Shown: positions 35,956-50,093, counted from the first letter of the stretch. The stretch: DNA of 64,000 nucleotides from IMGVR_UViG_3300032236_001859:152044-216043, one strand, 5' to 3'. Notes: generated by a model not told the origin, from the letters alone. Program-made: numbers and translations.

Positions 35956-37455
35956 CTAGAATTGTTTCATGCGTGGATTCCTGGCGTGGCAAGCCTTGCA
36001 CACCAGCGGCAACCCTTGGAGGCCGATGGCATCGTAGCCCCCTCTGGCAACCCTCGTCTTATTCACTCGCCAATTCGACAGGATGTCTGCCGGGGTATCC
36101 CTAAGGACATTCCCGGCCTGTATGGTGTTCTTGAAGTCCGCACAGCAATGAATCACGGTGCCATCGTTTCGGACGATTAACTCGTGGTCCTGCCGATGAC
36201 AGATCCCGAAGTCACCTGGACCCACGTTATCGGGGAGATCCTTGTGCTCGCGCCTGAGATCCAACCCAGACTCCCGGATCACGATGTGCGAATAGGTTTT
36301 CCTTAACTCCCGTGCCGCAGCGGCGTCCTCATGTGAGTACGCGCTCCAAACGACCTCATCGAAGTCGGCTAGATAACTTGCCTTCTCTGGATCCCTGGGT
36401 ATCAGCTTACCATTGGTCCACAAGTTGAACTTAACTGGTAGCATGCGTTGCTTAATTTTACCAATGGTCTCCAGTACCTTGTCTAATTCTAACAGGGGTT
36501 CGTTATAGAAGTGAAAGGCGATGTGCCCCCGGAACCCCTGGGTGACCATGTAGGCAGCGAACTCCACAATGCTCTCAGGGGTCAACGCAGTGGCCTGGGG
36601 GTCACGTGGGATCTCATTGATGGGACACCGGGAATGAACCCCTGCGAGATTGCAAGTAGTCCCGACCTCAAAGCACAGGTATCTGATCTCCGCGGGGCTC
36701 CAGAGCTGCCAGCGCCGCCCATTGATCGGTGGCTCGATGACCACTGGTGGCGGAACAGGAAGGAGGTCAACACGGGGGTCATGTTTGATCAAGGGTTCCT
36801 GGGGATGCCACCACATGACCTCTGACCACGTACGCCCAATCGTGGATCTCAGGGTCCCCTGCGCCGCGATGTGCTTGCGGACCCCATAGAACCTATGGGT
36901 ACGGTGGAATCCCCTGAGAACTTGATCTGGACTCCTCGCATTCCGCGTCATCTCGATGTAGATCTCAGCCAACTTGGACACCTTGTAGAGGATGCAATGC
37001 GTTCTCACGGCACCACGGACCACGACGAGGTCGTCAGTGAGCGCTGCAGGTGGTACCTGGTGCTCACCACCACAGTAGAGCCCATAGGCGTCTGAGGGAA
37101 CCCTGGGGAGTACATCTGACAGTACGGTGAGGAAATCCGGGGAGAACACACAGTCATCCTCAATGAGCAGCGCCCACTTGGCATCAGACATCATCATGGA
37201 CTCATACGCCATGAGGTGGCTGACATAGCACCCGAAGTCCCCTGGGCGATTGAACCATTCAGGCGGCAACTTCGGCCGCATCAAGGATTGGTCAAAACCG
37301 TAGAAGGGGGGAAGCCAGTCAGATGGGATGACTGCCTTGTCGGCTTCACGACGGAAAACCTCGAGCCGATCTGGGGTACGCCGCAGCGTCAGGACGCCTC
37401 GCCAACCCACCGCTTGTGTCAAGTAATCCAGGGAACGCTCTGGTGCAGACATCAC
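35956..37455 (-). CDS. GT25-like glycosyltransferase fused to radical-SAM/SPASM-like domain
   Basis: FGCYVSHL and LIEDD (GT25); CNLAGVHSRCP, FYNEPLL, LWTNG (radical-SAM-like); C..LIVRNDG.VIHCC..GNV...CKAC (SPASM). Confidence 0.75.
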   Translation of the reverse strand: MMSAPERSLDYLTQAVGWRGVLTLRRTPDRLEVFRREADKAVIPSDWLPPFYGFDQSLMRPKLPPEWFNRPGDFGCYVSHLMAYESMMMSDAKWALLIEDDCVFSPDFLTVLSDVLPRVPSDAYGLYCGGEHQVPPAALTDDLVVVRGAVRTHCILYKVSKLAEIYIEMTRNARSPDQVLRGFHRTHRFYGVRKHIAAQGTLRSTIGRTWSEVMWWHPQEPLIKHDPRVDLLPVPPPVVIEPPINGRRWQLWSPAEIRYLCFEVGTTCNLAGVHSRCPINEIPRDPQATALTPESIVEFAAYMVTQGFRGHIAFHFYNEPLLELDKVLETIGKIKQRMLPVKFNLWTNGKLIPRDPEKASYLADFDEVVWSAYSHEDAAAARELRKTYSHIVIRESGLDLRREHKDLPDNVGPGDFGICHRQDHELIVRNDGTVIHCCADFKNTIQAGNVLRDTPADILSNWRVNKTRVARGGYDAIGLQGLPLVCKACHARNPRMKQF

Positions 37456-37459
37456 GGGG

Positions 37460-39889
37460 TTACCTCGTCATGAAAGTGTAGGGGCCGACACCATCCCGGA
37501 AGTCCCAGGCCGAGCCGACCAGTGTCATCGTTGGCGGTGTCTTGGGGTCTCCTGCCTCGCGAGCCTTCGCCGCGGGATCAAAGTACCACCAGGGGAGTTC
37601 GACGAAATCTTTGGCGCGGATGTTTCCTGAGAGCACGGAGTCCAGGGCTAGATCAACGGTCTCCTTGGCTTTGATCCTGGCCTTGCAGGAGTCAGCCCAG
37701 GCCTCGATGGTAACTGAGCCATAGGCTGCACCGACAACCCTGGATCGAACCTTACCATCGAAGTCCTTGAATCCAAAGGCACCAGCACCAATGGCGCAGA
37801 GTGCACTGGGGTCACGTATGACTTCGACGTCGGCATCGATGCAGAGGCCCCCGACGCCCATGCGGAGTGCTGCTGGCTTCGCGATCTCGTTGAGGACATC
37901 GTGTGGCAACTCGGCGACAGTGACGCCTAGATCGTCTTCATAAAAACTGGTGACCATCGTGGCGGTCTCCGGGGTGTCCTGCCACAGGTTGACATCCCAG
38001 CCCAGGGACTCCAGCAACTCGATGTTCTTGGCAACCGTGGCGGCGACTTCACCCTCGATCTTGGTGCCGATGGCCATGATGTGGATAATCTTGGGGATCG
38101 TGGCCTCATCTGCAGTCGGGGGATCCAGGGGCTCTAAATCGAAGCCCTCGAGATCGGAGAACCCCCCGGCCTGTTTGAGCAGCCTGAGGTACAAGCGTTC
38201 CTGTGGGGTATAGGTGCCCGTGGCGGGTTCCCCCCAGTACCGAATACGCTTGGGTTCAATCTTGGGTGCGATGTGGGTGTCGATGCCTGTGGTCACAATG
38301 GTATCAGCCCAAGTGCGAGCCCATCGAATGGCCTCGGCTCCAGTGGATAGCCCCCAGGTCTCGTGGACCACCGGGGGTTGCAGGCGACGCTTGGCGTAGG
38401 CGGGATCCCAGACATCTGGCTTGTTCGCACTGATGTGGCGCAGCCGTGAGAGCACCTCGGCGTAGCGGGCACCCTGCGCGGGGTTCTCGAGCACCCTGGG
38501 TTGGATGAGGACGACTCTCCAGGGCTTCAGCATGGCCAGACCGATCTCGAGGTCTTCCAGGGCGCGGGGATGCTGAGGGTTCAGTACCCAGTAGTCGGTG
38601 CGGTCCCCGACGGGGTAGCCATCGAGGCGTGGGAAGTTGATTCGGATGACGACGTCATCGGATCGCATGCCGTCATCCCGCCAGCCCTCACCTGCATTGG
38701 CAGTGGATCCATTGCCAACAATGAATGCACGTCGGCTACCATCATGCTTGTCGGTGTCTATCTTGAGGGGGCGTGTGGTCGCCGGGATATTCCAGGCCCC
38801 ATTACGAGGCGGGATCCCCGCGGCGGCCAGCGCTTTGTCCTCGAGTTCGACGAGGCGTTCAGTGGACTTCCCAGCGGGGGCGACTGCGAGCTCAGCGGTA
38901 TAGGCGTCCCAGGCCGCCTTGACCTCGGCGATACCGAGACCAGCGGAGTAGCCCCAGGCGAGATCCCGCAAAGAATCTGTTAGTATAGGGGGTGCTATTC
39001 GAGGTTGTGTGGGCTTCGCGGGCTCCTTGAAGTGGCCATCATAGAGCCCAGCCGAGGACTCCCTGGGGTTCACCTTGGAGTCATTGGTGGCCTGGGCCCG
39101 GGCATCGATGAAGGACTTATAGGGGAACGCGGTGAGCCCAGAGATCTGGGTGGTATTGAATACCTCGAATCCATGGTGAAGGAACTCGACCTGGAGCTGG
39201 GTGAACAATCCATTGAGGTACTCGAAGAGTGTGTTGTTCTTGTCGGCGACTGTGGCATCGACGACCTGATCATGGTTGTACGCCTTCTTGGGATCCATCT
39301 TGAAGTCAGCACCGATGAGGTAGACCCTCTTGAACCCCAGGATGTAGAGGATCCGCATCGCGGCGACCATGGTGCTCCGACCACCCCTGCGGTGATCATC
39401 GCCTTCCTGGCCCCAGTTGATGGTATCCTCATGTAACCAGGTCTTGGCATCAAACTTGTCATTGCGCCGGATGAACCAGGTGTTCGGGCAATCCTTGGGG
39501 GTCCGCACGGGGTGGTCCCGTAACGGCATGTCCTGATAGGCCAGAGGATAGAACTTCTGGATACCGGGATCCAGCCAGATCGAGTTCAGGAAGCGATGGG
39601 GTTCATCGAGGCCACACCAGAGCTGGGGACGCCAGCCCTGGGCAGCATTGTTGACCGCCATCGTGATGATCCCAGGCGTCGTTGAGAGCGCTTTGAGATC
39701 AATGGCACCTGCGCTGGGGCCGCCACAGACCAAGAATGCAGTGGCGCCAGCGTAGGCGTGTCCCAACCAGGCGTTCTCCATCTGTGATGTAAAGAACACG
39801 GCGGGCTGGGAACGCAGGATGCGCCCAGCCCGGGCTTCAGTTGCCGTGATGATGTTGAAGGCATCGTGACGCCCGGGGTGGGTGGTCAT
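37460..39889 (-). CDS. Triple-domain glycosyltransferase: DUF115/Maf-like + GT29 sialyltransferase-like + GT32 (DxD)
   Basis: FLVCGGPS..TMAVNNA..LGFKRVYLIGAD; AFIVGNG..DVVIRIN...VGDRTD (sialylmotif L-like) and LSTG..TTGID (sialylmotif S-like); IPKIIH..GGLCIDADV. Confidence 0.75.
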   Translation of the reverse strand: MTTHPGRHDAFNIITATEARAGRILRSQPAVFFTSQMENAWLGHAYAGATAFLVCGGPSAGAIDLKALSTTPGIITMAVNNAAQGWRPQLWCGLDEPHRFLNSIWLDPGIQKFYPLAYQDMPLRDHPVRTPKDCPNTWFIRRNDKFDAKTWLHEDTINWGQEGDDHRRGGRSTMVAAMRILYILGFKRVYLIGADFKMDPKKAYNHDQVVDATVADKNNTLFEYLNGLFTQLQVEFLHHGFEVFNTTQISGLTAFPYKSFIDARAQATNDSKVNPRESSAGLYDGHFKEPAKPTQPRIAPPILTDSLRDLAWGYSAGLGIAEVKAAWDAYTAELAVAPAGKSTERLVELEDKALAAAGIPPRNGAWNIPATTRPLKIDTDKHDGSRRAFIVGNGSTANAGEGWRDDGMRSDDVVIRINFPRLDGYPVGDRTDYWVLNPQHPRALEDLEIGLAMLKPWRVVLIQPRVLENPAQGARYAEVLSRLRHISANKPDVWDPAYAKRRLQPPVVHETWGLSTGAEAIRWARTWADTIVTTGIDTHIAPKIEPKRIRYWGEPATGTYTPQERLYLRLLKQAGGFSDLEGFDLEPLDPPTADEATIPKIIHIMAIGTKIEGEVAATVAKNIELLESLGWDVNLWQDTPETATMVTSFYEDDLGVTVAELPHDVLNEIAKPAALRMGVGGLCIDADVEVIRDPSALCAIGAGAFGFKDFDGKVRSRVVGAAYGSVTIEAWADSCKARIKAKETVDLALDSVLSGNIRAKDFVELPWWYFDPAAKAREAGDPKTPPTMTLVGSAWDFRDGVGPYTFMTR

Positions 39890-39891
39890 GC

Positions 39892-40203
39892 TTAACTCCT
39901 GCGAGTCTTTTTCTTCTTGGCGTGCTCACGACGAGCCCGCGCCTTGATGATACCGCTGCGCTCCCTGAGGAGCTTGAGCTGACGGTTCTGCTCAGCGGTA
40001 CGTGCGGCGACAATGCGTTGCCGGCGCAGTGCCCTGGCCTTCTCCAGGGCTTCATCGCGGCTGCCGGGGTGATCCCCTGTGGCCTTCTCATAGGCCATGC
40101 GTTCCTCGGGGGTCAGGATCCCAGGTGTGGCCTCGGGCTTCTCAGGGGTACCGACCACAGATGCCGTCGCGGCATCAATGACTGCTTTGAGATCAGTGCT
40201 CAT
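39892..40203 (-). CDS. Small hypothetical protein with basic C-terminus
   Basis: 103 aa, ATGA coupling. Confidence 0.55.
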   Translation of the reverse strand: MSTDLKAVIDAATASVVGTPEKPEATPGILTPEERMAYEKATGDHPGSRDEALEKARALRRQRIVAARTAEQNRQLKLLRERSGIIKARARREHAKKKKTRRS

Positions 40204-40799
40204 GCCTTCCCTTTCTTCTTCGCCTTGGACTTGGACTTGGACTTCACAGTCTCGACGCTGGAGACTGTCTTGACCTTGGCCTTCAAGGTGCCGCCAGGTG
40301 TGGCCTTTTTCTTCAACACCTTTTTACCCAACTCGGCCTCGCGTGCCTGGAGAGCTGCGATCAACTGGCGTGGGGCAGCAAGAAAGTTGGGGTCATTTAG
40401 ACTCGTAAATGTGTACCCAGCCTCTTTCAGCTTCTCAGATGCAACACGGAATACACGGAAATCCCCCACAACCGCAACATCGATGTCACGTGACAGGCCA
40501 TCACCTGCCTTAACGGTGCGCCACGCTGAAGCCGGGAGAGTACGCGCGCGACGAATGATGGGGTCCCCTTCTTTCACCTCGGGTGCACCGCGTGTACCAA
40601 CTACCACCGGACCCTCACCAGGGATCAGGTACAGAAGGCGAGACTTGGCCTTCTGGAAGACATCCCCAAGACTGTTGGGTGCATTCATATGGGTGATCTC
40701 AAGATTGGCTATCCCCATGACGATGCTGAATAGAGCGTCGATCTCTTTCAGGCGCTCGAAGTTGGCATTGGGGTTGCAGGATTTGGAACATTTCGACAT
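40200..40799 (-). CDS. Hypothetical protein with Lys-rich tail
   Basis: Start re-called at MSKCSK after an AGGAG RBS. Confidence 0.6.
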   Translation of the reverse strand: MSKCSKSCNPNANFERLKEIDALFSIVMGIANLEITHMNAPNSLGDVFQKAKSRLLYLIPGEGPVVVGTRGAPEVKEGDPIIRRARTLPASAWRTVKAGDGLSRDIDVAVVGDFRVFRVASEKLKEAGYTFTSLNDPNFLAAPRQLIAALQAREAELGKKVLKKKATPGGTLKAKVKTVSSVETVKSKSKSKAKKKGKA

Positions 40800-40867
40800 A
40801 TAGTCTCCTCTGGGCGTTAGCCCATGTGGGTGGGTTGACTCACAGTAAACCATGACTCTCAGCGGTG

Positions 40868-41131
40868 TCAAGTCGGATGGGTGTCTGGGATGTCAGCGAT
40901 GGAGGCCTGAGTCCGCGTGATACCGCCAGTGGCCACAACAAACAAGTTCTGGACATATTCAGTGGATGCGCGCTCCTTGAACTCCTGTGGGGTGATCCCT
41001 GAGGTCAACGCGATCTGCAAGATGGTGCTTCGCAATGCAGCGGCGGCCTGAAGCAGCTCAGTCGAGTTGTTGATCACGTTCTGAATCTCTACGGGGAGCT
41101 TGGGTGCCGCGGGTAGTGGTGTGTAATCCAT
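40868..41131 (-). CDS. Small hypothetical protein
   Basis: Start re-called at MDYTPL after an AAGGA RBS. Confidence 0.5.
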   Translation of the reverse strand: MDYTPLPAAPKLPVEIQNVINNSTELLQAAAALRSTILQIALTSGITPQEFKERASTEYVQNLFVVATGGITRTQASIADIPDTHPT

Positions 41132-41141
41132 GGTGGTATCC

Positions 41142-42881
41142 TTAATCGATGGGTTTGAGGTTGAAGCGCTGGAGGACACCCCCAATGCTTGTGGTACGTG
41201 GAACTCTAAGAGCCCAGTACCCGGCGAGAAGGCGCTCCCTGTACCGCAGGGGCTGCACGGCGAGTGGGCACCGCCCCAAGGCCACCACGGGCACCCCAAT
41301 CATGGCGGCTTCGACAAGGGAGGTCGAATTGATGCCGACGACGACTTCACTGATACGCGCGGCTTCATAGAAGTCTTTGATGGTGTCGCGGTTCTCGATG
41401 GTGGCCCGTGCGGACTTCCAGGGTCTCTGGGATCCCGACTTGGGGTGGGGGCGGACCACGATGTCATGGCTGGGATACATCGCGGAGACATGTTCAATAA
41501 ACTCGCCCATGTTGCGGTAAGGGCAATGATACAAGATCTGGGAGTCGTTCTCGATCTGGAGGGGTACGAGGACGCGTCCCTTCTTGGGTTCCAGAGGATA
41601 CTTGGTACGGAGTTCGACAACACCCTCACGGTACGCCTTGAGGTCGGCGTCACCAACCCAGCCCAGTGGTCGCATCAGCATGGAGTCCCCAGCGAAGCCA
41701 TCGAGGTCAACGAGGAATGTTGTCGCCTGGGGGGCCACACCCCACTCGAAGAAGGCATAGGGGATCTTCATGGCCTCACAGAGCGCCTTGGCGTTGCGAC
41801 CATTGTGCTGGGCCCCATTCCAGATGACCACAAACGAGGCCCGCTTGAGATCACCGGCGACCTTGAAGAACTCGGTGTCGATGCCGATGAAGGCGTAGGG
41901 GCGCCCCAGGGACTCCGCCCAGCGCTTCACGAAGCCCTGACACTCACTCCCATTCCACCCGATATAAACAATGGCGCCGTCGTCGGCACGCCTGCCGGGG
42001 GCCTCCTCGGGCTCACAGTCGCCCTGGGGGACCTCGTGGAGGGTTTCCTTGCCCGGCCAGGGATCCATGGGGGCCAAGACGGCATCGGAGGCGCGGACCT
42101 CGTAGCCCAGGGTGGCCCGGGCATACGCCGAGGTGAGTTCGCGCGCAATCCGCTCAGTCCACTTCGAGGCATCGACATCAGCCTGAGTATCCCGGGCATG
42201 GAGAACGGCGATCCCGGCGTGGTGGAGGTAGAACCGCTGCGGTGCCATCCATGGACTCAGGGGTTCCTCGGTGATCCCCGTGGTCTGCCTGCCGAGTTCC
42301 CTGTTGAGATGATTGACCTGGAAGGGGAACTCGGCGAGAACACGCTGGGCAAAGATGACATCATGGTTGCGCATGACGCCCTGGGGATACGTGATATTGG
42401 CATCGACGATGGGGGCCCTGCGGAAGAATGCGGCGTTATACCTGAGAGGAAACTTGCCCTCTAGGGATTGCCGGGTTACCGTGTAGTCACCCCAGGACAC
42501 CGCGTTGCGAGCCACGGCTTCATTAGCCTTGAGTTCATGAGTCCACAGCACGATGTCGGGGTTCTTCTCGGCCTCCTGTTCGAGGACGGCGACACGGACT
42601 TCTTCGGAGAAATCCCTGTCACCGTGCACCAAGATGAAGTCAGCACTTGAGCGTGCGATGAGGAAGTTGAGGGCGGCGCCGGCACCAATACGGTGAGAAC
42701 TCGTGAAGACTTCAATTCGGGAGTCGATCCCGCGCTCCTCCTCGATGAGCTCAGTGGTCTGCGCTGTGGCGGCATCACTGAACACCAAGACGCGGTTGAC
42801 CCCGCGAATCTTGAGTATGTTCTGGAGAGTGGCCTCGATGTGGGGGTTGTCATGTGTAACCAAGACGATGTCAGTGGTCAT
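41142..42881 (-). CDS. GT2-like domain fused to KpsS/KpsC-like (capsule synthesis) domain
   Basis: IVLVTHD..VLVFSDAAT..GAGAALNFLI..ADFILVHGD (GT2 fold); LVPLQIENDSQI, VVRPHP, INSTSLVEAAMIGVPVVALG (KpsS-like). Confidence 0.75.
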   Translation of the reverse strand: MTTDIVLVTHDNPHIEATLQNILKIRGVNRVLVFSDAATAQTTELIEEERGIDSRIEVFTSSHRIGAGAALNFLIARSSADFILVHGDRDFSEEVRVAVLEQEAEKNPDIVLWTHELKANEAVARNAVSWGDYTVTRQSLEGKFPLRYNAAFFRRAPIVDANITYPQGVMRNHDVIFAQRVLAEFPFQVNHLNRELGRQTTGITEEPLSPWMAPQRFYLHHAGIAVLHARDTQADVDASKWTERIARELTSAYARATLGYEVRASDAVLAPMDPWPGKETLHEVPQGDCEPEEAPGRRADDGAIVYIGWNGSECQGFVKRWAESLGRPYAFIGIDTEFFKVAGDLKRASFVVIWNGAQHNGRNAKALCEAMKIPYAFFEWGVAPQATTFLVDLDGFAGDSMLMRPLGWVGDADLKAYREGVVELRTKYPLEPKKGRVLVPLQIENDSQILYHCPYRNMGEFIEHVSAMYPSHDIVVRPHPKSGSQRPWKSARATIENRDTIKDFYEAARISEVVVGINSTSLVEAAMIGVPVVALGRCPLAVQPLRYRERLLAGYWALRVPRTTSIGGVLQRFNLKPID

Positions 42882-43723
42882 ACCAGACCTCCGACGCCGT
42901 AGTCGACCACAGCAAAGTTGATCTCTCCTCGTGGCGCCGTGGTATCGATGCCGACACCGTGCCAGATCTCAGTGGTGACCTCGAAGGTGCCCTTGTCACC
43001 CAAGGTGATCCGTGGCCACACCGCATCAGCGATGACGACGTGGTGGCCACAGGAGGCCCCACGAAGAATGCAGGTCTTATGTGGCAACGCGGAGGCCTTG
43101 GGAGCCCCGACGACAACCCTGACGCCGGCTTCACGTGCCAGTAAAGGATTCGCGGACAGCCGGGCCTTCACGGCAGCGCTGATCATCCAGGCCTCGGGGT
43201 ACACGATGAGATCACATGCCGACTTCATCACCGAGGTGACTTGCTCACCAGGCTTACTCGCATCGAGGAGCGTGGCGCGGGAGATCACGGATTCGAGGAC
43301 CCCGAGCACCCTGGTGTCCACTGCGAAGGCCAGGGGGGTCAAGCACTCCCGGGTGTACCAGTCCCAGAACGATTCCCCCGTTTTCAGGAGATCAGCGATC
43401 GATGACTTCGCGGTCACCGGGGTACGCAGGATCGCAAACTTTACATCTCCCTTTACACCTGGCTCGACAACATTGGCGACCAAGACATCCTTGGGGTTCG
43501 CACTGAAGTGGGCCCTAGCAGCGTCGACATTGGCTGCGGGGGCCTCGAGGGCGACCCCGAAGACCTCGGCGAGGCTGCGACGACTCGGCGGCCACCACTT
43601 CATCGTGGTCGCCACGTTCTCCAACCACTCCAGGGTCCACACCCCAAGGATGGCATTGAAGGCCACGGGATCCGAGTTCACGGAGTCGAGAAGACCAGCG
43701 GGGGCACCAGTGAATGGGGTCAT
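42878..43723 (-). CDS. Divergent HK97-fold major-capsid-like protein (putative)
   Basis: Spine-helix-like VTAKSSIADLLKTGESFWDWYTRECLTPLAFAVDTRVLGVL and C-terminal EIWHGVGI...PRG resemble large-phage major capsid proteins from memory. Confidence 0.5.
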   Translation of the reverse strand: MTPFTGAPAGLLDSVNSDPVAFNAILGVWTLEWLENVATTMKWWPPSRRSLAEVFGVALEAPAANVDAARAHFSANPKDVLVANVVEPGVKGDVKFAILRTPVTAKSSIADLLKTGESFWDWYTRECLTPLAFAVDTRVLGVLESVISRATLLDASKPGEQVTSVMKSACDLIVYPEAWMISAAVKARLSANPLLAREAGVRVVVGAPKASALPHKTCILRGASCGHHVVIADAVWPRITLGDKGTFEVTTEIWHGVGIDTTAPRGEINFAVVDYGVGGLV

Positions 43724-45087
43724 GCGTTCCTCGTCAAACGGAGGCCATGGAAGACGTCAGCGAAATCGATGACGCAGGTGTAACTCAGGGTGACCTCGAG
43801 GATCCCAGACTTCGCCAGCTTGGTCTTCTCAGCCTTGGCAGCCTTGAGTTCTTTTTCCTCGGCGCATGCCTTGAGCACGGCTTCATCGAGTTCCCGTGCC
43901 TTGGCGTCATGTGCCCTGGTGACCTCCTCGGCGAACTCGGGGAGCACGGGTTCCCGTGGGGCCTTCAGGTAATCCTCGAGGGCCTGCTTGGCTGCAGCCA
44001 CAGCTATCACTGCGGTGCCATGTGCCCTCGCGGCTTCATCGGCGGCAATCCTGCCGATGTCCTTGAGACGGATGCCATAGGCCCAATGGTCTTCCTTGAA
44101 GACGCCCCCAGGCTTCTTGAACACTGCGATACCATGCGGAAGTGGCGTAGGATCCTCAACGGCGACCTGGGCTGCCTTCAGGGATTCAATGATCTCCCCG
44201 TTGGCGAGCCCAATGGCCGCGTACATCTTGGAGTCAATGAGCACGGATTCATTGTCTTGAGTCATCGCGACGAGGACGTCATCTGCTGGCTTCACGGCAT
44301 CCTTGAAGGCAATGTGGCCATCCAATGCGATGTCGAGGTAATCCGCTATACCCCTGCAGAGATGGGTAGCAAACCAGTGCCGGAATGTGACACCTTGCTC
44401 CGCGATCTCGCCGAGGTCGACGACAGCCTTGACCACGAAGATCTTAGCGTTGCCTGATGTTTCAGCGATGCCCTCGTGACCATCAATAAAATCGTGTCGT
44501 AACTTAGAAAGTTCTGTAAGAATCTCCTCTTGGATCTCTGGTTTCCAGATACGTTGGAGGCAGGAGTTCTCAAGCATCCACCATGCCGCGAACTCTCTGC
44601 AGGTCTTGAACCCCATGAGGGCGTCTTCGAGAACACTGGCGTAGAATGCAGCATTGAGCTCCCGTGCCCTCTCGGGGCCAGGACTCGCGAGTTCTACTGG
44701 GGGCACATATCGTGGGGGCGCCGAGAGCGAGTCGATGTGGGCACCAATAGCCTTCCAATCCGGTTTGGCCACGATGCCATCGAGCTCGGGATCCTTGACG
44801 TAATCCACTGTGTTAAAGGAGATATGACCATTCGCATTCCGCTTTATCAGGATCTTGCCTGCACTGGCGCGTGCCGCTGCAATGGCCTGCCTGAGTTCCA
44901 TGGTCATCGGGAGACCATCGGGTAGCGAGGCGGGGTCAACGATCTGACCTTTATCGATGACGTGGAGCCCTTTGGCCGCGATATGATTCTGCCGCCACTG
45001 CCCCAGGATCTCATTCCGTTTGTGAGCAAACGAGGACCCTAAATTGATCTCGAATCCGCCTGAGACCATGTCGCCTTCACGCAGCAT
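43720..45087 (-). CDS. Hypothetical protein, paralog of the downstream capsid-like gene
   Basis: Ungapped 37-aa similarity to 42878-43723; C-terminal coiled coil; promoter-like motif upstream. Confidence 0.55.
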   Translation of the reverse strand: MLREGDMVSGGFEINLGSSFAHKRNEILGQWRQNHIAAKGLHVIDKGQIVDPASLPDGLPMTMELRQAIAAARASAGKILIKRNANGHISFNTVDYVKDPELDGIVAKPDWKAIGAHIDSLSAPPRYVPPVELASPGPERARELNAAFYASVLEDALMGFKTCREFAAWWMLENSCLQRIWKPEIQEEILTELSKLRHDFIDGHEGIAETSGNAKIFVVKAVVDLGEIAEQGVTFRHWFATHLCRGIADYLDIALDGHIAFKDAVKPADDVLVAMTQDNESVLIDSKMYAAIGLANGEIIESLKAAQVAVEDPTPLPHGIAVFKKPGGVFKEDHWAYGIRLKDIGRIAADEAARAHGTAVIAVAAAKQALEDYLKAPREPVLPEFAEEVTRAHDAKARELDEAVLKACAEEKELKAAKAEKTKLAKSGILEVTLSYTCVIDFADVFHGLRLTRNA

Positions 45088-45154: not shown

Positions 45155-45736
45155 TCAGCCTTCTTCGCTGTCGTCTTCCTCGGACTTATCACTCCCCATT
45201 GTCTTGTATAACAAGGCAGCGAGTAGGGCAGCGGCGCCGCCACCAAGGGCAATCTTGTCCCAGGGGAGGCCTTGGTCTGGCTTCGGCTTCCCGAGAACCC
45301 CGGAAGCCCCGGATAACGCGAGATCACGGACACCACGATAGGGGGCACCAGCCCAGGACTTGGCGTCGGGATCCTTGGGATCCCCTGATAACGCATCGGC
45401 GGTGGCCTGGGTGGCCTTGAGTGCTGGTGTCGCCGCGACACCAGCTGCGGTGCCGATGAGTGCATTCTTGGTCGCCGTGGTCTCTTTCGCAGGCGGGCTC
45501 ACCGGTGGTTTGGTGACTTGCCGGTTGGCATGCCAGCGCTTCGCTGCACTACCCAGGTTCAGGGCACCTTGGGTGCCCAGGGCAGTCATCGCCGCTGAAT
45601 TGGCTTCATCGTTGGAGGCCCCGCCGATTTGGTTGGCGGTGTAGGCGATACCCGCGGGAGCCACGGTACGCAGCGCGGTGTTACCCGTGCGCTGCAGGTC
45701 GGCTTGATTCCACCACTTCTTCACTGGGTTTTGCAT
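45155..45736 (-). CDS. Ala/Gly-rich protein with C-terminal TM and acidic tail
   Basis: AGGAG RBS before MQNPVKKWW; IALGGGAAALLAALLYK-acidic end resembles the C-terminus of 10382-11677. Confidence 0.55.
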   Translation of the reverse strand: MQNPVKKWWNQADLQRTGNTALRTVAPAGIAYTANQIGGASNDEANSAAMTALGTQGALNLGSAAKRWHANRQVTKPPVSPPAKETTATKNALIGTAAGVAATPALKATQATADALSGDPKDPDAKSWAGAPYRGVRDLALSGASGVLGKPKPDQGLPWDKIALGGGAAALLAALLYKTMGSDKSEEDDSEEG

Positions 45737-46370
45737 GCCGTGTTCTCCTGCTCCTGAGTCGACGACCATCTGGTCTGTAGAATCTCAGGATATGGTAGAC
45801 ACGCGCCGAGGATAGCCCCGAGGCCTGGGCGACCTTCCTGAGGCTCTTGAGATCCACGTAGAGGGTGTGGACCACCTTGATGTCATCGGCTTCACCGGGG
45901 AGCAGCGCCGGCCTCTTCAGCCCGAACTTCCGGGCGACATAGAAGATCGTTGAGGGTGCCTTGCCCAACTTATCAGCGATGTCCGACAAACGGTCTCCAG
46001 CGTCGAGACGTTCTTGGATCCACTTCAGGATGCCGGGGTCCATGGCACGCTTGGTGAACGCGTACTTGGCATGATACCCTGGGCCATGTTTGTAGTAGGC
46101 TGCACGAACACTGGTGAGCTTGTGCGCTGTTCTCACCGAGATGAGCTCGAGGTTCTGAGTCTTCGCGAACTCCGCAGCCCAGTCCTCTGGGGACATCGGC
46201 TGGGGTCTCGGCCGCTTCGGCTTCATAGGCTTCGATCTCTTGAGCTCACCAGGCAGGGGGCCTGGCTTCGAGAGATCGATGAAACCCTGGGGGAGCCCGG
46301 GGGCAGTGGTCACCGGGGCGTACAGGACCTTGTTGCCCTGTGGGCTCGGCTTACTGAGATCAATGGGCAT
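45681..46370 (-). CDS. DNA-binding protein with two HTH motifs
   Basis: RLSDIADKLGKAPSTIFYVARKFGL and SLRKVAQASGLSSARVYHIL. Confidence 0.65.
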   Translation of the reverse strand: MPIDLSKPSPQGNKVLYAPVTTAPGLPQGFIDLSKPGPLPGELKRSKPMKPKRPRPQPMSPEDWAAEFAKTQNLELISVRTAHKLTSVRAAYYKHGPGYHAKYAFTKRAMDPGILKWIQERLDAGDRLSDIADKLGKAPSTIFYVARKFGLKRPALLPGEADDIKVVHTLYVDLKSLRKVAQASGLSSARVYHILRFYRPDGRRLRSRRTRHAKPSEEVVESSRPAAHG

Positions 46371-46371
46371 C

Positions 46372-46668
46372 TCACCACTTCCCCAGGGGGCACTTGGATT
46401 CAGGGGGTGCTGTGATCTTGGAGACAAACCCATTTGCCTTGGCGCAGCGGCGGGCACGCACTGGGGCGGCAACCGGTGAGGATTCCACGCAGTCCGAACA
46501 TTTGGCGAGGCGGATCAAGATGGTGCCCTGATCGGAGTGACCAGGCCTGGGCGGCACCGGTGCCTGGGGCTGCGGTGCCGCCACCGAGCTCACCGCGATG
46601 ACAGCCTTGGTGATTGGACCGGGGCTAGATGTGCTCTGACCCCAAGGGGGCGGTGTTGTCGCTGGCAT
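46372..46668 (-). CDS. Small Cys-containing protein (RL..CxxC...C...CPLGKW)
   Basis: C-terminal KCPLGKW motif common in phage small Zn-binding proteins. Confidence 0.45.
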   Translation of the reverse strand: MPATTPPPWGQSTSSPGPITKAVIAVSSVAAPQPQAPVPPRPGHSDQGTILIRLAKCSDCVESSPVAAPVRARRCAKANGFVSKITAPPESKCPLGKW

Positions 46669-47002
46669 TGGATTGACCTCTGAGTGGGAGTTGAATCTTC
46701 TGAGCATGTACCTGGGCTGGGTCTGGCTTCAGTCCCTGTGCTAGGGCGGCACCAAATGCCTCATCCAGGGTTGGTAATGGTTTTGATTTCACAGCATTCT
46801 CAGATGCCTTCTCGAGATGCCGGGCGTAGTCCTCGGTGACCTCGATGGCCTTGAGCATGGGATACGTCGCACTGAGATCTCGACCAGCCTTGATGCCGTC
46901 CCCAATGGCCTGCCTGGCCAGGATCAGGAGCATCTGGAACTCCTTGTAGGTCGGAGCACGTGGCGTGGGCATATTGAGGATAGCGGGAGGAGGTGGGATC
47001 AT
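46625..47002 (-). CDS. Hypothetical protein, probably leaderless
   Basis: 125 aa; ATG 7 nt after a -10-like CATCCT; no RBS. Confidence 0.55.
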   Translation of the reverse strand: MIPPPPAILNMPTPRAPTYKEFQMLLILARQAIGDGIKAGRDLSATYPMLKAIEVTEDYARHLEKASENAVKSKPLPTLDEAFGAALAQGLKPDPAQVHAQKIQLPLRGQSNASDNTAPLGSEHI

Positions 47003-47009
47003 GGGCGTA

Positions 47010-47036
47010 AGGATGTCAGGGTTTACTGGGGGTCAA
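47010..47036 (-). promoter_or_regulatory. Short-spacer promoter TTGACC-N15-CATCCT with internal GTAAAC
   Basis: ATG 7 nt downstream. Confidence 0.6.
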
Positions 47037-47049
47037 GTCGGACCACCGC

Positions 47050-48048
47050 CTACAGCGGGGTTATCGAACCCGTGAGACCATCTGCGCTGACAATACACCT
47101 GTATTGGCGTGAGACGCTGCCAGATGGTGGATTCGGAACATTGTAAACCGCTAGGATGTTGCCCTGCGATCCCACCATGACGTCAGCTGAGTACGCAGGT
47201 GGACTGCGCCCACTAATGTGGCTTGTCGCCACCGTTATCGTGACATCTATGGCTATGCCGGGGCGTGTCACTGTATAGCCCACATAACCGTAATGCCGGG
47301 CCAGCGGGCCATTGGCAGCGCTTGGGCACGAGGACCCCACGACATCAAGACCAGTGATCACCTTAGTCGCGGAGTCACAACTAACACTGGACTGGACAGC
47401 GGGGACACGCCCACATCCAGACTCCAGAATCCATGGGGTACCATTGCCGATGTCGTACCTGATCTGCACGGTACCTGGGGTAACCACAAACCTCGTGAAA
47501 AACCTACCATCAACTGTGCGAGTAGTCGATACAGTTAAAGGTGCACCACCATATCCCCACACGCTAAGCGCAGCAGTGGATATCGCCCAGACTTCAACAT
47601 TGTCGCCGGGGCTGGCGTAGAAATTCTGTTCCCATGACGTCCCTGACTTAGTGAACGCCAGAGTACAGGCCTCAATACATTGTGTCGTGAAATCCCACGC
47701 AGTACCCGAGCCGCCCTCACAATTGGGGATCACGATGACACGAATCACTGTGGATCCCCCGGGGACATAGGCGTCCTTGACGAGACCGGTGACCCCAACA
47801 CATCCAGTATCAAAGAGCACGGTTCCCGAGATACCAGATACATCCGGAGAGCATGGCCCCACCGGGTTAGAGGTGACAACCACCCGGTCCTTCTGGGTGT
47901 ACGTGTTAATTGTAAACCGAATGATAGTTCCCGCTGGTGGTGCTGGATAATCCTGGCAGAACCCGGCGTCACCCCCTGACGAGTCCAAGAGGAGATCACA
48001 GATGTTCCCCCCTTTGCAACACGTACATGTCGAGGGCCACTTGATCAT
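47050..48048 (-). CDS. Cys-rich-N-terminus beta-sheet virion/tail protein
   Basis: MIKWPSTCTCCKGG start; ATGA coupling to the 682-aa gene. Confidence 0.55.
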   Translation of the reverse strand: MIKWPSTCTCCKGGNICDLLLDSSGGDAGFCQDYPAPPAGTIIRFTINTYTQKDRVVVTSNPVGPCSPDVSGISGTVLFDTGCVGVTGLVKDAYVPGGSTVIRVIVIPNCEGGSGTAWDFTTQCIEACTLAFTKSGTSWEQNFYASPGDNVEVWAISTAALSVWGYGGAPLTVSTTRTVDGRFFTRFVVTPGTVQIRYDIGNGTPWILESGCGRVPAVQSSVSCDSATKVITGLDVVGSSCPSAANGPLARHYGYVGYTVTRPGIAIDVTITVATSHISGRSPPAYSADVMVGSQGNILAVYNVPNPPSGSVSRQYRCIVSADGLTGSITPL

Positions 48049-50093
48049 GCGTACATCTCCGAGCACAGCACGATGATCTTCTTCACGGAGTCATCGCTGG
48101 AGTCGCAGATCTCGATCTCGCGGAACTTCAGGGGGAGCGAGGCCTCAGCATTGGCGTTGGCATTCAAGATGGCGGTGAGGTCATCGTGATTCAGGATCAG
48201 GGCGTCATCAAAGCTGGCCCCGGAGTCCGTGGTGTATCTCCAGGCCCAGTCATGTGCCTGGTACTCCTGGGCGATATCCCAGACCACCTTGCGGTATCGT
48301 TTGTCGTAGTCTCCGACCCCAGCGGGAGAATGCGATCCAAACTCGGGGCACGTGTACCACTTCATCACTGTGGTGTAGCCGTCCTGGACATTGACGAGGC
48401 CACCAATCATGGTGTTCCCGGGACCGAAATCGTTGCCCTTACTCACCGGGGTCCACGACAAACAGAAGTCCTGGAGTTCAGCGAAGTCGTAGGCATCCCC
48501 GATGCGGGCGTCGTCATCGTAATCCATGTAGAATACGAGCTGCCCAGGCCGGGTCGGCGCCGTGAAGTCGAGTTCAGGGATCGTGGTCTGATCAGGGTTC
48601 CCCGCGATGACGAGGTCGAGGCGCTTCATCACGAAGGCACGGCGTTCATAAAGCTCAGAGGTAAACCAGGCCATGACATCCCAGGCCTCGGGGGCCTGCC
48701 CAAGTGGGGCCTCAGGTGCGGTGCCCTGTTCCCCCGTGGGGAGATCCGCGGGATCCGGCATCACCGAGGGGCGATCACGGAATCTGAGTAATGCGGTGGC
48801 ATTGGTGGGGTCATTGTAGTAGAACCAATCGAATGCGATCTCGGCGAGATTGAAGGCTTCAGGGGATACCCCGGAGTCGACACCGTACCGCCAGGCCATG
48901 GCGTGCTCCACGGTGGGCTCCACCATCGCGCACCACCCCTTGGTGTAGTGGCGGAAGATGGGGCGTGTCATCACGGCGTTACCGGGTTGCTCCGAGGTCC
49001 ACATCCCTGGGCTGTGATCATCGGTGGGACCAGCCTCATAGTTCGCCGCGGGGTCCACGAAGTAAGTGGTGTGATCCTTGAGGGGGTGTGATGCCGGGTT
49101 GATCCAGAAGCGACCAGAGACCACCACGGCGACGTTGCCATCGGCTTCCTGGTCCGACCACAGGGCAACCCCGACTTCCTGCTGGGGATCCCTGACATTG
49201 ACGTTGGCAAACGTGGAGGCATCACAGCTCGCGAGTTCCCATATCGCGGGGACCACATCGGTCCTCCGCGTCATAATCGAGGGTTGCACGATATGGGCTG
49301 GGTTCTCCACATTGTTCACTGAACCCGGCTTCAACCTCAGGATCTTGGCATCAGGAGAACCCGAGGGTTTGATCGCCCAGACCGCGGTGTGATTCGTGGA
49401 TCCCGAGTCGACGTGGTGAATCATGGCGACCACTGGACTCCAGACCTGGAGGGGCGGCGCATGGTAATCATTCCAGCCATCGACGATAACGGGGTCACCC
49501 TCTGGGAAGTCAGTACCATCAGGAGTGAAGGCATCGGGGTAATAGCCCAGGGGCACCCGGGTCCCATCGGTTTCCTCACCCTTGTCGCCATACATGGAAC
49601 CATCGGGGGCAATGAAGGCGAGGCGTGCGTATCGCCCAGGGAAGACAACCCCAGGGCCAGCCTTGTTGGCCACCGCGAAGCTCTGATCGGGGACCACGGC
49701 TCCCGCACCACCACCGCCTAAGCCTAGGACAACTGCGTTAAATGTCGCCGAGGTGGGGATCTCCACACAGGTCACCCCAGTGTAATCCCTGTATAACCTG
49801 ATAACCAGAGAACCGGGTTCCCGGGCATGCGTGGGATCGATCTCATAGGTGCGCCGGCCTTCACCATCGACGCCTACGACGACATCCAGGGTTCCAAAGA
49901 AATAGATCGCGGCGGCATACCAGGGCATCGGGGAGCCCGTGGAGGACGTCACATGTGCGGGGATCCGGGTTGCCGTGAACTCCCCGCTGAGGACCTCGAG
50001 CTCGACCTCACATGGGGGATCGATGCCCACAGGGCTGGGGGCCACGGAATCACGAATCTTACCGGTGAGCCGGCCCAGGTAGACATCAGCCAT
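48045..50093 (-). CDS. Putative tail/baseplate-associated protein (682 aa)
   Basis: Internal duplication (AWRYGVDSG / AWRYTTDSG); C-terminal REIEICD..KKIIVLCS. Confidence 0.5.
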   Translation of the reverse strand: MADVYLGRLTGKIRDSVAPSPVGIDPPCEVELEVLSGEFTATRIPAHVTSSTGSPMPWYAAAIYFFGTLDVVVGVDGEGRRTYEIDPTHAREPGSLVIRLYRDYTGVTCVEIPTSATFNAVVLGLGGGGAGAVVPDQSFAVANKAGPGVVFPGRYARLAFIAPDGSMYGDKGEETDGTRVPLGYYPDAFTPDGTDFPEGDPVIVDGWNDYHAPPLQVWSPVVAMIHHVDSGSTNHTAVWAIKPSGSPDAKILRLKPGSVNNVENPAHIVQPSIMTRRTDVVPAIWELASCDASTFANVNVRDPQQEVGVALWSDQEADGNVAVVVSGRFWINPASHPLKDHTTYFVDPAANYEAGPTDDHSPGMWTSEQPGNAVMTRPIFRHYTKGWCAMVEPTVEHAMAWRYGVDSGVSPEAFNLAEIAFDWFYYNDPTNATALLRFRDRPSVMPDPADLPTGEQGTAPEAPLGQAPEAWDVMAWFTSELYERRAFVMKRLDLVIAGNPDQTTIPELDFTAPTRPGQLVFYMDYDDDARIGDAYDFAELQDFCLSWTPVSKGNDFGPGNTMIGGLVNVQDGYTTVMKWYTCPEFGSHSPAGVGDYDKRYRKVVWDIAQEYQAHDWAWRYTTDSGASFDDALILNHDDLTAILNANANAEASLPLKFREIEICDSSDDSVKKIIVLCSEMYA

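What the first reader, a model, noticed from the sequence alone, without database searches (positions are those of the whole stretch)
42878..45087. Two adjacent, highly diverged capsid-fold (HK97-like) paralogs far from the portal
Seen: VKAVVDLGEIAEQGVTFRHWFATHLCRGIADYLD (44325-44433) aligns without gaps to VTAKSSIADLLKTGESFWDWYTRECLTPLAFAVD (43310-43417), with identical V, A, G, F, W, A and D plus conservative pairs. The 281-aa protein ends in GVGI...PRG like large-phage major capsid proteins. Inference: extra capsid-fold genes, next to the glycosyltransferase island and under their own promoter. They could be minor vertex proteins, capsid-size modifiers, decoys or encapsulin-like compartments.
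Basis: inference. Interest (0 to 1): 0.7.

Follow-up and report, generated by a model that had tools for sequence, protein, structure and literature searches.

The report
Extra capsid-fold gene pair with glycosyltransferase
A 216-kb phage carries, besides its normal capsid gene, two fast-evolving extra copies of the capsid-fold gene locked into one operon with a sugar-adding enzyme, a conserved but optional cassette whose role, perhaps a sugar-coated addition to the capsid, is untested.

Summary
The two ORFs are real: A, 42878-43723(-), 281 aa; B, 43720-45087(-), 455 aa.

The genome's true major capsid protein, C (312 aa), lies outside the window at genome 129154-130092(-), near a head-protease-like gene. 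C matches the annotated capsid protein of Salmonella phage Arash (E 9e-19), the solved phage G capsid protein 6wkk (E 2.7e-5) and PF05065 (E 2.3e-5).

B links to C (E 2.8e-4; 0 of 40 decoys) and weakly to PF05065, through the strand plus spine-helix region. So A and B are extra HK97-type paralogs. This rests on transitive homology, not on a confident 3D model.

B, A and a GT2/Capsule_synth glycosyltransferase are translationally coupled and syntenic in 7 lineages. They sit in a ~50-kb variable arm missing from a complete relative, and two complete relatives lack the capsid-fold cores.

dN/dS is 0.13 for A and B against 0.03 for C. The function is inferred: auxiliary, probably glycosylated, capsid-shell proteins.

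The parts
43720..45087 (-). Gene B, 455 aa: an N-terminal ~140-aa domain, then a capsid-fold core (residues ~141-455) with a helical-hairpin insertion
   Evidence: ORF. Family alignment A4. hhalign to the A family E 1e-8, to the true capsid family C E 2.8e-4, and to PF05065 E 0.0017-0.009. dN/dS 0.127.
44668..45087 (-). B N-terminal domain (residues 1-140). It is the most conserved part of the B family, is absent from A and C, and is a separable module.
   Evidence: Invariant residues G10 G11 F12 E13 R24 H42 and others. The same domain alone occurs in a 355-aa ORF of the relative G706 (HMM E 4.8e-7; hhalign 94.3%, E 1e-7), fused there to a non-capsid-like C-terminus.
44299..44448 (-). B residues ~214-263: a beta-strand plus a long helix that align to the HK97 strand after the E-loop and the spine helix.
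   Evidence: hhalign aligns B 211-297 to PF05065 positions 70-181, which map to HK97 gp5 ~180-290. The register is the same in the C-to-B alignment.
43810..44058 (-). Helical-hairpin insertion of ~85 aa in B (residues ~344-426), specific to this clade
   Evidence: It is the only confident part of the AlphaFold model (pLDDT 80-91). It is absent from P0011 and from the B-like genes of L002, L003 and L004. hhalign against the A family skips it.
42878..43723 (-). Gene A, 281 aa: capsid-fold paralog without an N-terminal extension
   Evidence: ORF. Family alignment A3 with 19 invariant columns. ESM Atlas neighbours are PF05065/PF25209 capsid clusters at 0.96. BLASTP to the L002 B-like protein E 5e-6. 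The B-family HMM hits it at E 5e-5. dN/dS 0.125.
43271..43438 (-). A residues ~96-151: strand plus long helix equivalent to B 214-263.
   Evidence: A-to-B hhalign alignment. Secondary structure from the low-confidence model: E96-100, H105-115, H119-128, H137-151.
43720..43723 (-). ATGA overlap of B's stop and A's start, with GAGGA upstream
   Evidence: Sequence read.
42878..42881 (-). ATGA overlap of A's stop and the glycosyltransferase's start, with GGAGG upstream
   Evidence: Sequence read.
41142..42881 (-). Two-domain glycosyltransferase, 579 aa (GT2 N-terminal, Capsule_synth C-terminal), translationally coupled to A
   Evidence: Pfam PF00535 E 2.5e-6 and PF05159 E 2.2e-9. It lies directly downstream of the A-like gene in all 7 lineages. 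dN/dS 0.135.
35956..39889 (-). Two further glycosyltransferases (499 and 809 aa) of the island. The 809-aa family accompanies the cassette in 6 of 7 lineages.
   Evidence: PHROG glucosyltransferase and sialyltransferase hits. BLAST clusters.
45681..50093 (-). Upstream conserved cassette partners: HTH protein (45681-46472), 338-aa protein (47050-48066) and 682-aa protein (48045-50093), all of unknown function
   Evidence: Syntenic homologs in 4 to 6 of 7 lineages. No Pfam or PHROG hits. No paralogs in the head module.
6452..8332 (-). Portal candidate, 626 aa, about 35 kb from the pair
   Evidence: phrog_64 portal E 1.4e-4 and PF05133 SPP1_portal E 9.3e-4, both on the same region. 56% identical homolog in G706.

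Best explanation
SHOWN. A (281 aa) and B (455 aa) are two diverged paralogs of each other. By transitive profile homology they are also related to the phage's own HK97-type major capsid protein, C. C lies outside the window at genome 129154-130092(-), near a head-maturation-protease-like gene.

B is a mosaic of three parts: a conserved ~140-aa N-terminal domain that also occurs in a different protein of a related phage; a capsid-fold core; and, in this clade only, an ~85-aa helical hairpin inserted between two C-terminal strands.

B, A and a two-domain glycosyltransferase (GT2 plus Capsule_synth) overlap by ATGA at both junctions. They keep this order in seven lineages whose A proteins are only 26-34% identical to the window's, always followed by more glycan-building enzymes.

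The cassette sits in a ~50-kb variable arm. Related complete genomes with the same capsid protein lack the capsid-fold cores of A and B. All three genes are under purifying selection, but about four times weaker than on C.

INFERRED. A and B are auxiliary shell proteins made in roughly equal amounts from one message. They join or coat the capsid built by C, for example as special capsomers or a surface layer. The coupled glycosyltransferase, with the downstream island, attaches a phage-made glycan to them. The result would be an optional sugar-coated capsid surface. B's N-terminal domain would act as the docking or targeting module, and its helical hairpin as a surface or cementing projection.
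For: Paralogy:
- hhalign A family vs B family: 94.5%, E 8.4e-8; 95.7%, E 1e-8 with enriched alignments.
- BLASTP of window A vs the L002 B-like protein: E 5e-6.
- The B-family HMM hits the A ORF at E 5e-5.
- A and B form one BLAST cluster across 7 loci.

C is the true capsid protein:
- tblastn to the Arash 'major capsid protein', 96% coverage, E 9e-19.
- The C profile has one PDB hit at E<=1: 6wkk phage G gp27, E 2.7e-5.
- hhalign to PF05065: 76%, E 2.3e-5, 0 of 40 decoys.
- A head-protease-like neighbour, phrog_18299 E 5.5e-7.
- No other PF05065, PF25209 or PF07068 match in the genome.

A/B linked to the capsid fold:
- C vs B: 41%, E 2.8e-4, score 37.8 against decoys 16.3+-2.4, 0 of 40.
- B vs PF05065: E 0.0017, score 31.1 against decoys 14.4+-2.3, 0 of 60, on the strand plus spine-helix region, with a transitively consistent register.
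- ESM Atlas neighbours of A (0.96) and of an insertion-free B-like protein (0.93) are HK97 capsid clusters.

Cassette:
- Synteny.
- ATGA overlaps with Shine-Dalgarno motifs.

Accessory status:
- No A/B core in 5 relatives, with a positive control.
- Arm absent from G706.

Selection: dN/dS for A 0.125, B 0.127, glycosyltransferase 0.135, C 0.030.

Precedent: capsid and tail-tube glycosylation in mycobacteriophages (Freeman 2023), as cited in PMC12619734.
Against: - No confident 3D model: AlphaFold pLDDT was 32 for A and 44 for B, and Foldseek on those models found nothing.
- A alone shows no significant profile match to C or to any capsid family.
- The C-terminal halves of A and B could not be aligned to capsid families, so the P-domain and A-domain are unverified.
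- B vs PF05065 weakens to E 0.009 (and to E 0.12 against a merged reference) with other alignments.
- There is no evidence that A or B is in the virion, that either is glycosylated, or that they bind each other. The complex prediction gave no answer.
- The glycosyltransferase could instead act on host surface polysaccharide, as proposed for jumbo-phage glycosyltransferase clusters (PMC7824862).
- Tight coupling to an enzyme is unusual for a protein needed in many copies.
Confidence: 0.4

Rival explanations
1. Vertex or special-capsomer paralogs in the manner of T4 gp24. A and/or B replace the major capsid protein at pentons or other special lattice positions. The glycosyltransferase next door is functionally unrelated.
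For: A and B are paralogs of the true capsid protein. From established knowledge of T4, gp24 is a diverged paralog of gp23 encoded right after it, and it is dispensable or absent in some relatives. This fits the accessory distribution seen here.
Against: The pair is 65 kb from C and not in the head module. There are always two paralogs, not one. Both ATGA-coupled junctions and the order B, A, glycosyltransferase are kept in 7 lineages, which argues for a functional link to the enzyme. Translational coupling suggests similar amounts of A and B, rather than a rare vertex protein.
Confidence: 0.2
2. A separate shell. A and B assemble together into their own HK97-fold particle or lattice, distinct from the DNA-filled capsid: an encapsulin-like compartment, an outer layer or a decoy. 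It would possibly be glycan-coated and would use B's N-terminal domain as a built-in scaffold.
For: B is sized like HK97 gp5 with its N-terminal scaffolding domain (350-388 aa in most lineages), and A is sized like mature gp5. The cassette is self-contained and optional.
Against: No match to the encapsulin family PF04454 anywhere in the genome. ESM neighbours are phage capsids, not encapsulins. No cargo-like, portal-like or protease-like gene is conserved in the cassette, and its other families have no head-module paralogs. The complex prediction gave no answer on A-B contact.
Confidence: 0.13
3. Exapted non-structural role. The capsid fold has been recruited as a scaffold, chaperone or carrier for the glycan-synthesis machinery, which modifies the host cell surface (superinfection exclusion or receptor masking) rather than the virion.
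For: The cassette heads a polymorphic glycosyltransferase island. Such islands in jumbo phages have been proposed to diversify host surface polysaccharides (PMC7824862). A and B evolve at the same relaxed rate as the glycosyltransferase and not like C.
Against: I know of no precedent for an HK97-fold protein working with glycosyltransferases on the cell envelope. Neither A nor B has an obvious membrane or secretion signal in the sequences read. Keeping two full-length paralogs is easier to explain by lattice formation.
Confidence: 0.15
4. Not capsid-fold at all. A and B are paralogs of each other, but their weak links to capsid families are false positives driven by a shared strand-plus-long-helix pattern.
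For: B vs C reaches only 41% hhalign probability. B vs PF05065 reaches 4-16% and depends on the alignment used. A alone is at the null. Pfam, PHROGs and PDB sequence searches are all empty for A and B. There is no usable 3D model.
Against: Three independent pairwise alignments (B to C, B to PF05065, C to PF05065) agree in register, and each beats all 40-60 decoys by 7-12 standard deviations. The B-to-C alignment also covers the N-terminal helices (C 8-60 against B 141-186). True HK97 families score no better against each other in the same test (PF05065 vs PF25209 E 0.006). ESM features point independently to capsid clusters for both families.
Confidence: 0.1
5. A or B is itself the phage's major capsid protein.
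For: No Pfam capsid family matches anywhere in the genome. A has the size of a mature HK97-type capsid protein.
Against: C is a far better candidate. C is conserved at 71-99% across related phages. The capsid-fold cores of A and B are absent from two complete relatives, and A and B evolve about four times less constrained than C.
Confidence: 0.02

Closest known systems
T4 gp23 / gp24 (major capsid protein and its vertex paralog)
   Same: An extra, strongly diverged paralog of the HK97-fold major capsid protein is encoded in the same genome. The paralogs are adjacent to each other, and they are dispensable or absent in some relatives.
   Different: There are two extra paralogs here rather than one. 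They lie 65 kb from the major capsid gene, outside the head module, in a variable arm, and are translationally coupled to a glycosyltransferase. No sequence match to the Gp23 family PF07068. A vertex location is untested.
HK97 gp5 / Pfam Phage_capsid (PF05065), and the phage G gp27 capsid protein (PDB 6wkk)
   Same: C matches both families. B aligns to the PF05065 strand plus spine-helix segment. A has the length of mature gp5 and of gp27. B-family members of 350-388 aa have the length of gp5 with its N-terminal scaffolding domain.
   Different: A and B do not reach any Pfam, PHROG or PDB threshold by sequence. B's N-terminal domain is highly conserved, has mixed predicted secondary structure, and recurs in a non-capsid protein. 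No S78 protease family match was found in the genome.
Virion glycosylation in mycobacteriophages (Freeman et al. 2023, as cited in PMC12619734) and chlorovirus capsid glycosylation by viral enzymes (PMC9614988, PMC7019647; listed, not read)
   Same: Virus-encoded glycosyltransferases sit next to capsid-type genes and decorate capsid proteins with virus-specified glycans.
   Different: In those systems the main capsid protein is the acceptor. Here the enzyme is coupled to two accessory capsid-fold paralogs, and glycosylation of them is only inferred.
Encapsulins (Linocin_M18, PF04454)
   Same: HK97-fold shell proteins of about 270-300 aa that work outside a virion.
   Different: No PF04454 match in the genome, no cargo gene, a phage genomic context, and nearest language-model neighbours that are phage capsids.

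Membership tests
HK97-fold major capsid protein superfamily (Pfam Phage_capsid PF05065 and relatives) | Significant sequence or profile match to a capsid family | tested here: inconclusive
   Pfam, PHROG and PDB HMM searches are empty for every member of the A and B families. hhalign B vs PF05065 gives E 0.0017-0.009 and beats all 60 decoys. True HK97 families score similarly against each other in this test. A alone is at the null.
HK97-fold major capsid protein superfamily (Pfam Phage_capsid PF05065 and relatives) | Homology to a protein with an experimentally solved HK97 fold | tested here: met
   Met transitively. A to B E 1e-8. B to C E 2.8e-4, 0 of 40 decoys. C profile to 6wkk (phage G gp27) E 2.7e-5. 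The registers are consistent. The weakest link has only 41% hhalign probability.
HK97-fold major capsid protein superfamily (Pfam Phage_capsid PF05065 and relatives) | Spine helix preceded by the strand that leaves the E-loop | tested here: met
   B 211-297 aligns to PF05065 positions 70-181, which map to HK97 gp5 ~180-290. The homologous segments in A (96-151) and C (108-149) are in the same register. This rests on alignment, not on a structure.
HK97-fold major capsid protein superfamily (Pfam Phage_capsid PF05065 and relatives) | P-domain and A-domain beta-sheets in a three-dimensional model | tested here: inconclusive
   AlphaFold models had pLDDT 32 and 44, and Foldseek was uninformative. 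The complex run folded A at pLDDT 77 but returned no searchable model. The C-terminal halves did not align significantly to capsid families.
Functional major capsid protein of this phage | Conserved in related phages, located in the head module, under strong constraint | tested here: not met
   The A/B cores are absent from complete relatives G706 and G708, with a positive control. They lie in a variable arm. dN/dS is 0.13 against 0.03 for C. C meets all three criteria.
T4 gp24-type vertex protein | Paralog of the major capsid protein in the same genome | tested here: met
T4 gp24-type vertex protein | Occupies the pentameric vertices of the capsid | not testable with these tools
   This needs cryo-EM or virion proteomics of a cassette-bearing phage.
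Encapsulin (PF04454) | Match to Linocin_M18, and an adjacent cargo protein with a targeting peptide | tested here: not met
   No PF04454 match in the 216-kb genome at E<=1, while the control genomes ring. The neighbours are glycosyltransferases and unknowns.
Glycosylated virion protein (mycobacteriophage or chlorovirus type) | A glycosyltransferase encoded next to the capsid-type gene | tested here: met
   ATGA-coupled GT2/Capsule_synth enzyme, conserved in 7 of 7 lineages.
Glycosylated virion protein (mycobacteriophage or chlorovirus type) | Glycan demonstrated on the protein | not testable with these tools
   This needs mass spectrometry or glycostaining.

The most novel reading that the evidence does not exclude
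B and A co-assemble, in roughly equal amounts, into a second HK97-fold lattice that is not the DNA-holding capsid. This could be an outer glycan-bearing layer or a free glycan-coated particle. The coupled glycosyltransferase island would build its surface, and B's portable N-terminal domain would serve as the docking or scaffolding module. That would be an optional, horizontally shared 'glyco-shell' cassette of large phages.
Probability: 0.13. Interest if true: 0.85.

Novelty: new variant of a known kind. Interest (0 to 1): 0.62.

Why it matters
Duplicated HK97-fold capsid genes are known mainly from T4 (gp23/gp24), where the copy fills the vertices. Here a pair of capsid-fold paralogs has left the head module. 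One of them has picked up a portable N-terminal domain and a helical projection. The pair has become fixed in an operon with a glycosyltransferase that heads a glycan-synthesis island, and the cassette is shared by distantly related large phages yet missing from close relatives.

If the proteins are capsid add-ons that carry phage-made glycans, this would be a modular way for phages to change their particle surface. It would extend virion glycosylation, so far documented for mycobacteriophage capsid and tail proteins, to dedicated carrier proteins. If they form a separate shell, it would be a new use of the fold.

The result also shows that in very divergent jumbo phages the real capsid gene and its paralogs can escape all standard HMM libraries.

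Tried and rejected
- Direct BLASTP and shallow-profile comparison of A and B found nothing. The paralogy appeared only after distant relatives were found.
- Pfam and PHROG scans of every A and B family member were empty or spurious. The phrog_328 'head maturation protease' hit of B (E 0.046) lies in the helical insertion, and I dismissed it.
- A and B profiles against PDB sequences found nothing.
- AlphaFold2 on shallow alignments failed (pLDDT 32 and 44). Foldseek on those models returned no hit at E<=0.001 and was disregarded.
- Complex prediction for A plus B returned 'no answer', and I use it neither way.
- A merged-profile homology search and scans of IMG/VR and the metagenome collection gave only family members or close relatives.
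- HK97 gp5 relatives from viral contigs were too similar to make a profile.
- A early idea that B is a scaffold or protease and A the major capsid protein was rejected once C was found.
- My claim that relatives lack the family entirely was corrected. G706 holds B's N-terminal domain in another protein, but no capsid-fold core.
- The 'second head module' idea was rejected: the other cassette families have no head-module paralogs.
- No RNA runs were listed for the locus.
- No paper on phage Arash is held, and Freeman 2023 is not held.
- The HTH dN/dS value comes from a bad codon alignment and is ignored.

Full report
**Setting**

The window is the last 64 kb (152044-216043) of a complete 216,043-bp virus record with direct terminal repeats (repeat length 123 bp). 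All long ORFs run on the minus strand. The phage is very divergent. Of the 43 long minus-strand ORFs scanned, 14 had a PHROG hit at the thresholds used, most of them weak. The clearer ones are:
- a portal candidate at 6452-8332 (phrog_64 E 1.4e-4; PF05133 E 9.3e-4);
- tail-fibre-like and tape-measure-like proteins;
- a ribonucleotide reductase;
- several glycosyltransferases.

No annotated phage record matches the region at the DNA level, and none matches protein A by tblastn.

**The observation**

ORF A (42878-43723, minus strand, 281 aa) and ORF B (43720-45087, minus strand, 455 aa) exist. The left coordinates are 6-7 nt off.

The pairing scores 31 with BLOSUM62 and is the best ungapped 34-mer between the two proteins. 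However, 166 of 1000 shuffles do as well. BLASTP sees nothing, and shallow profiles give E 0.16.

**Paralogy is real**

Word-indexed searches found only close relatives of both proteins, plus one 40%-identical relative of B. An exhaustive HMMER search then found five distant A-family members.

Their contigs all carry a B-like gene of 350-388 aa immediately upstream, and a ~600-aa GT2 glycosyltransferase immediately downstream. Most of these B-likes lack an ~85-aa helical insertion that the window's clade carries.

The evidence for paralogy:
- Window A matches the L002 B-like protein by plain BLASTP (E 5e-6, A 79-276 against B-like 193-384).
- Family profiles match at 94.5%, E 8.4e-8.
- Enriched alignments match at 95.7%, E 1e-8, over 216 columns.
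- The B-family HMM finds the A ORF in its own genome at E 5e-5.

**The true capsid gene**

No PF05065, PF25209 or PF07068 match exists anywhere in the genome. Local HMMs flagged a 312-aa ORF outside the window, C, at genome 129154-130092(-), as the top non-self hit of both the B family and my PF05065 model.

The evidence that C is the major capsid protein:
- It matches the annotated major capsid protein of Salmonella phage Arash over 96% of its length (E 9e-19), and also matches three Vibrio phages.
- Its family profile has exactly one PDB hit at E<=1: the phage G capsid protein 6wkk (E 2.7e-5).
- It matches PF05065 by hhalign (76%, E 2.3e-5; 0 of 40 decoys).
- It lies a few genes downstream of a 485-aa protein that hits a head maturation protease family (phrog_18299, E 5.5e-7).
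- It is 71-99% identical across eight IMG/VR contigs.

C is therefore the major capsid protein.

**Linking A and B to the capsid fold**

- The C family matches the B family at 41%, E 2.8e-4 (score 37.8; decoys 16.3 +- 2.4, maximum 24.3; 0 of 40). The match covers the N-terminal helices and the strand plus long helix.
- B matches PF05065 at E 0.0017 (score 31.1; decoys 14.4 +- 2.3; 0 of 60). The matched segment corresponds to HK97 gp5 ~180-290: the strand leaving the E-loop, the spine helix, and the start of the A-domain.
- The three alignments agree in register: C residue 112, B residue ~221 and PF05065 position 79 correspond.
- In the same test, genuine HK97 families barely see each other (PF05065 vs PF25209, E 0.006). 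The test has low power, and the B signal is as good as a true cross-family signal.
- It is also fragile: with other alignments it drops to E 0.009, and to E 0.12 against a merged reference.
- Independently, the nearest ESM Atlas clusters are HK97 capsid families for both A (0.96) and the insertion-free B-like protein of L002 (0.93). Window B itself gave nothing (0.79).

Limits of the fold assignment:
- Both AlphaFold models were poor, and Foldseek on them was uninformative.
- A alone shows no significant link to C or to any capsid family.
- The C-terminal halves could not be aligned to capsid families.

I put the HK97-fold assignment for A and B at about 0.85-0.9.

**Anatomy of B**

- *N-terminal domain.* Residues 1-140 form the most conserved part of the family and have no counterpart in A or C. 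The same domain alone occurs in a 355-aa ORF of the related phage G706 (HMM E 4.8e-7; hhalign 94.3%, E 1e-7). There it is fused to a C-terminal part with no capsid similarity. It is therefore a portable module.
- *Helical insertion.* Residues ~344-426 form a confidently predicted helical hairpin (pLDDT 80-91) found only in this clade. It is inserted between two C-terminal strands. By the non-significant A-to-C alignment, this would be near the loop equivalent to the P-domain tip of HK97. That placement is an inference.

**The cassette**

- *Coupling.* The B/A and A/glycosyltransferase junctions are both ATGA overlaps with internal Shine-Dalgarno motifs. B has an AGGAG site after a 67-nt gap.
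- *Conservation across seven lineages*:
  - B, A and the ~600-aa glycosyltransferase are always together (7 of 7).
  - A second large glycosyltransferase and a ~700-aa unknown protein accompany them in 6 of 7.
  - An HTH protein and a ~420-aa protein accompany them in 5 of 7.
- *Downstream enzymes.* These vary and include Gly_transf_sug/Glyco_transf_29, PS_pyruv_trans, GLF, Glyco_transf_25 and methyltransferases.
- *No second head module.* The other cassette families have no paralogs in the head module.

**Accessory status**

The merged A+B core profile finds nothing in five related genomes that carry C at 73-83% identity. Two of these are complete with terminal repeats. The same profile finds A (E 1e-102) and B (E 3e-61) in the positive control G704.

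Against the complete G706 genome, nearly all of window 14.5-64 kb has no counterpart, while the portal candidate is 56% identical.

**Selection**

Against G704, dN/dS is 0.125 for A, 0.127 for B, 0.135 for the glycosyltransferase and 0.030 for C. A and B are functional genes, but they evolve like the enzyme and not like the capsid protein.

**Interpretation**

Shown:
- two extra capsid-family paralogs;
- one of them a domain mosaic;
- both in a conserved, translationally coupled, optional cassette with a glycosyltransferase.

Inferred: they are auxiliary shell proteins that join or coat the capsid built by C and act as acceptors or carriers of a phage-made glycan.

The precedent is capsid and tail-tube glycosylation in mycobacteriophages (Freeman 2023, cited in PMC12619734). 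The main counter-view is that jumbo-phage glycosyltransferase clusters remodel host surface polysaccharide (PMC7824862).

Rivals:
- gp24-like vertex proteins with no link to the enzyme;
- a separate HK97-fold shell;
- a non-structural exaptation;
- a false-positive fold assignment.

The encapsulin family found no sequence support. The binding prediction gave no answer. No RNA runs were listed for the locus.

**Verdict**

The finding is a new variant of a known kind (capsid-protein paralogy), with an unusual and conserved link to glycosylation. The function remains untested.

Noticed in passing
outside the window: G000:C1:129154-130092(-) = L205:9154-10092(-): The genome's true major capsid protein (312 aa). 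It escapes Pfam and PHROGs but matches phage Arash gp226, phage G gp27 (6wkk) and PF05065 by profile. A head-protease-like gene lies at L205:12783-14237(-).
   Followed up: yes
L205:7172-9018(-) (genome ~127.2-129.0 kb): Two endonuclease genes sit directly downstream of the major capsid gene: an HNH/homing endonuclease (phrog_3339, E 2.6e-41) and an endonuclease VII with an HTH domain (phrog_2633, E 4.7e-43). They look like mobile insertions next to a core gene.
   Followed up: no
G706 39951-41015(-) (L221/L222): A 355-aa ORF in a related complete phage carries only B's ~140-aa N-terminal domain, fused to an unrelated C-terminal part. The function of this portable domain is unknown.
   Followed up: partly
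window 14500-64000: About 50 kb at the right end of the genome has almost no counterpart in the complete relative G706. It includes the ribonucleotide reductase, the 1800-aa and 1006-aa fibre-like proteins and the whole glycosyltransferase region, so it is a large variable arm.
   Followed up: partly
window 27184-30606(-): This ribonucleotide reductase ORF is 1140 aa, but its best match (phrog_367, a 701-position profile) comes in three stretches. It may hold an intein or another insertion.
   Followed up: no
window 45155-45769(-): A 204-aa Ala/Gly/Thr-rich protein lies just upstream of B. It has a hydrophobic stretch near its C-terminus and an acidic tail. In five of the other six lineages this position holds a 350-490-aa protein instead (L003 has a 70-aa ORF there). 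That family is related to the tape-measure-like protein at window 10382-11677 and to genome ORF 142044-143120.
   Followed up: partly
window 780-6455(-) and 15626-21028(-): Two giant ORFs (1891 and 1800 aa) have no family match.
   Followed up: no
genome 63211-65262(+) (L204): A 684-aa ORF, one of the few long ORFs on the plus strand, gives a weak Terminase_6N hit (E 0.009). It is the likely large terminase, far from both the portal candidate and the capsid gene.
   Followed up: no
L141-L170 (prophage loci): Most PF25209 (Phage_capsid_4) matches in Pseudomonadota genomes lie at the end of open frames of roughly 600-790 aa. These capsid domains are therefore mostly fused to a long N-terminal region, which I did not analyse.
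   Followed up: no
L003:13491-16649 and L004:8915-10822: Glycosyltransferases of the island in relatives carry a 'faint' TcdA_TcdB Pfam mark beside Gly_transf_sug. This reflects only the shared glycosyltransferase domain. Nothing suggests a toxin.
   Followed up: no
records carrying the cassette vs relatives without it: Cassette-bearing records are 209.6, 216.0 and 217.0 kb. Complete or near-complete relatives without the A/B cores are 179-192 kb. The sample is too small to interpret, and the extra length partly is the variable arm itself.
   Followed up: no
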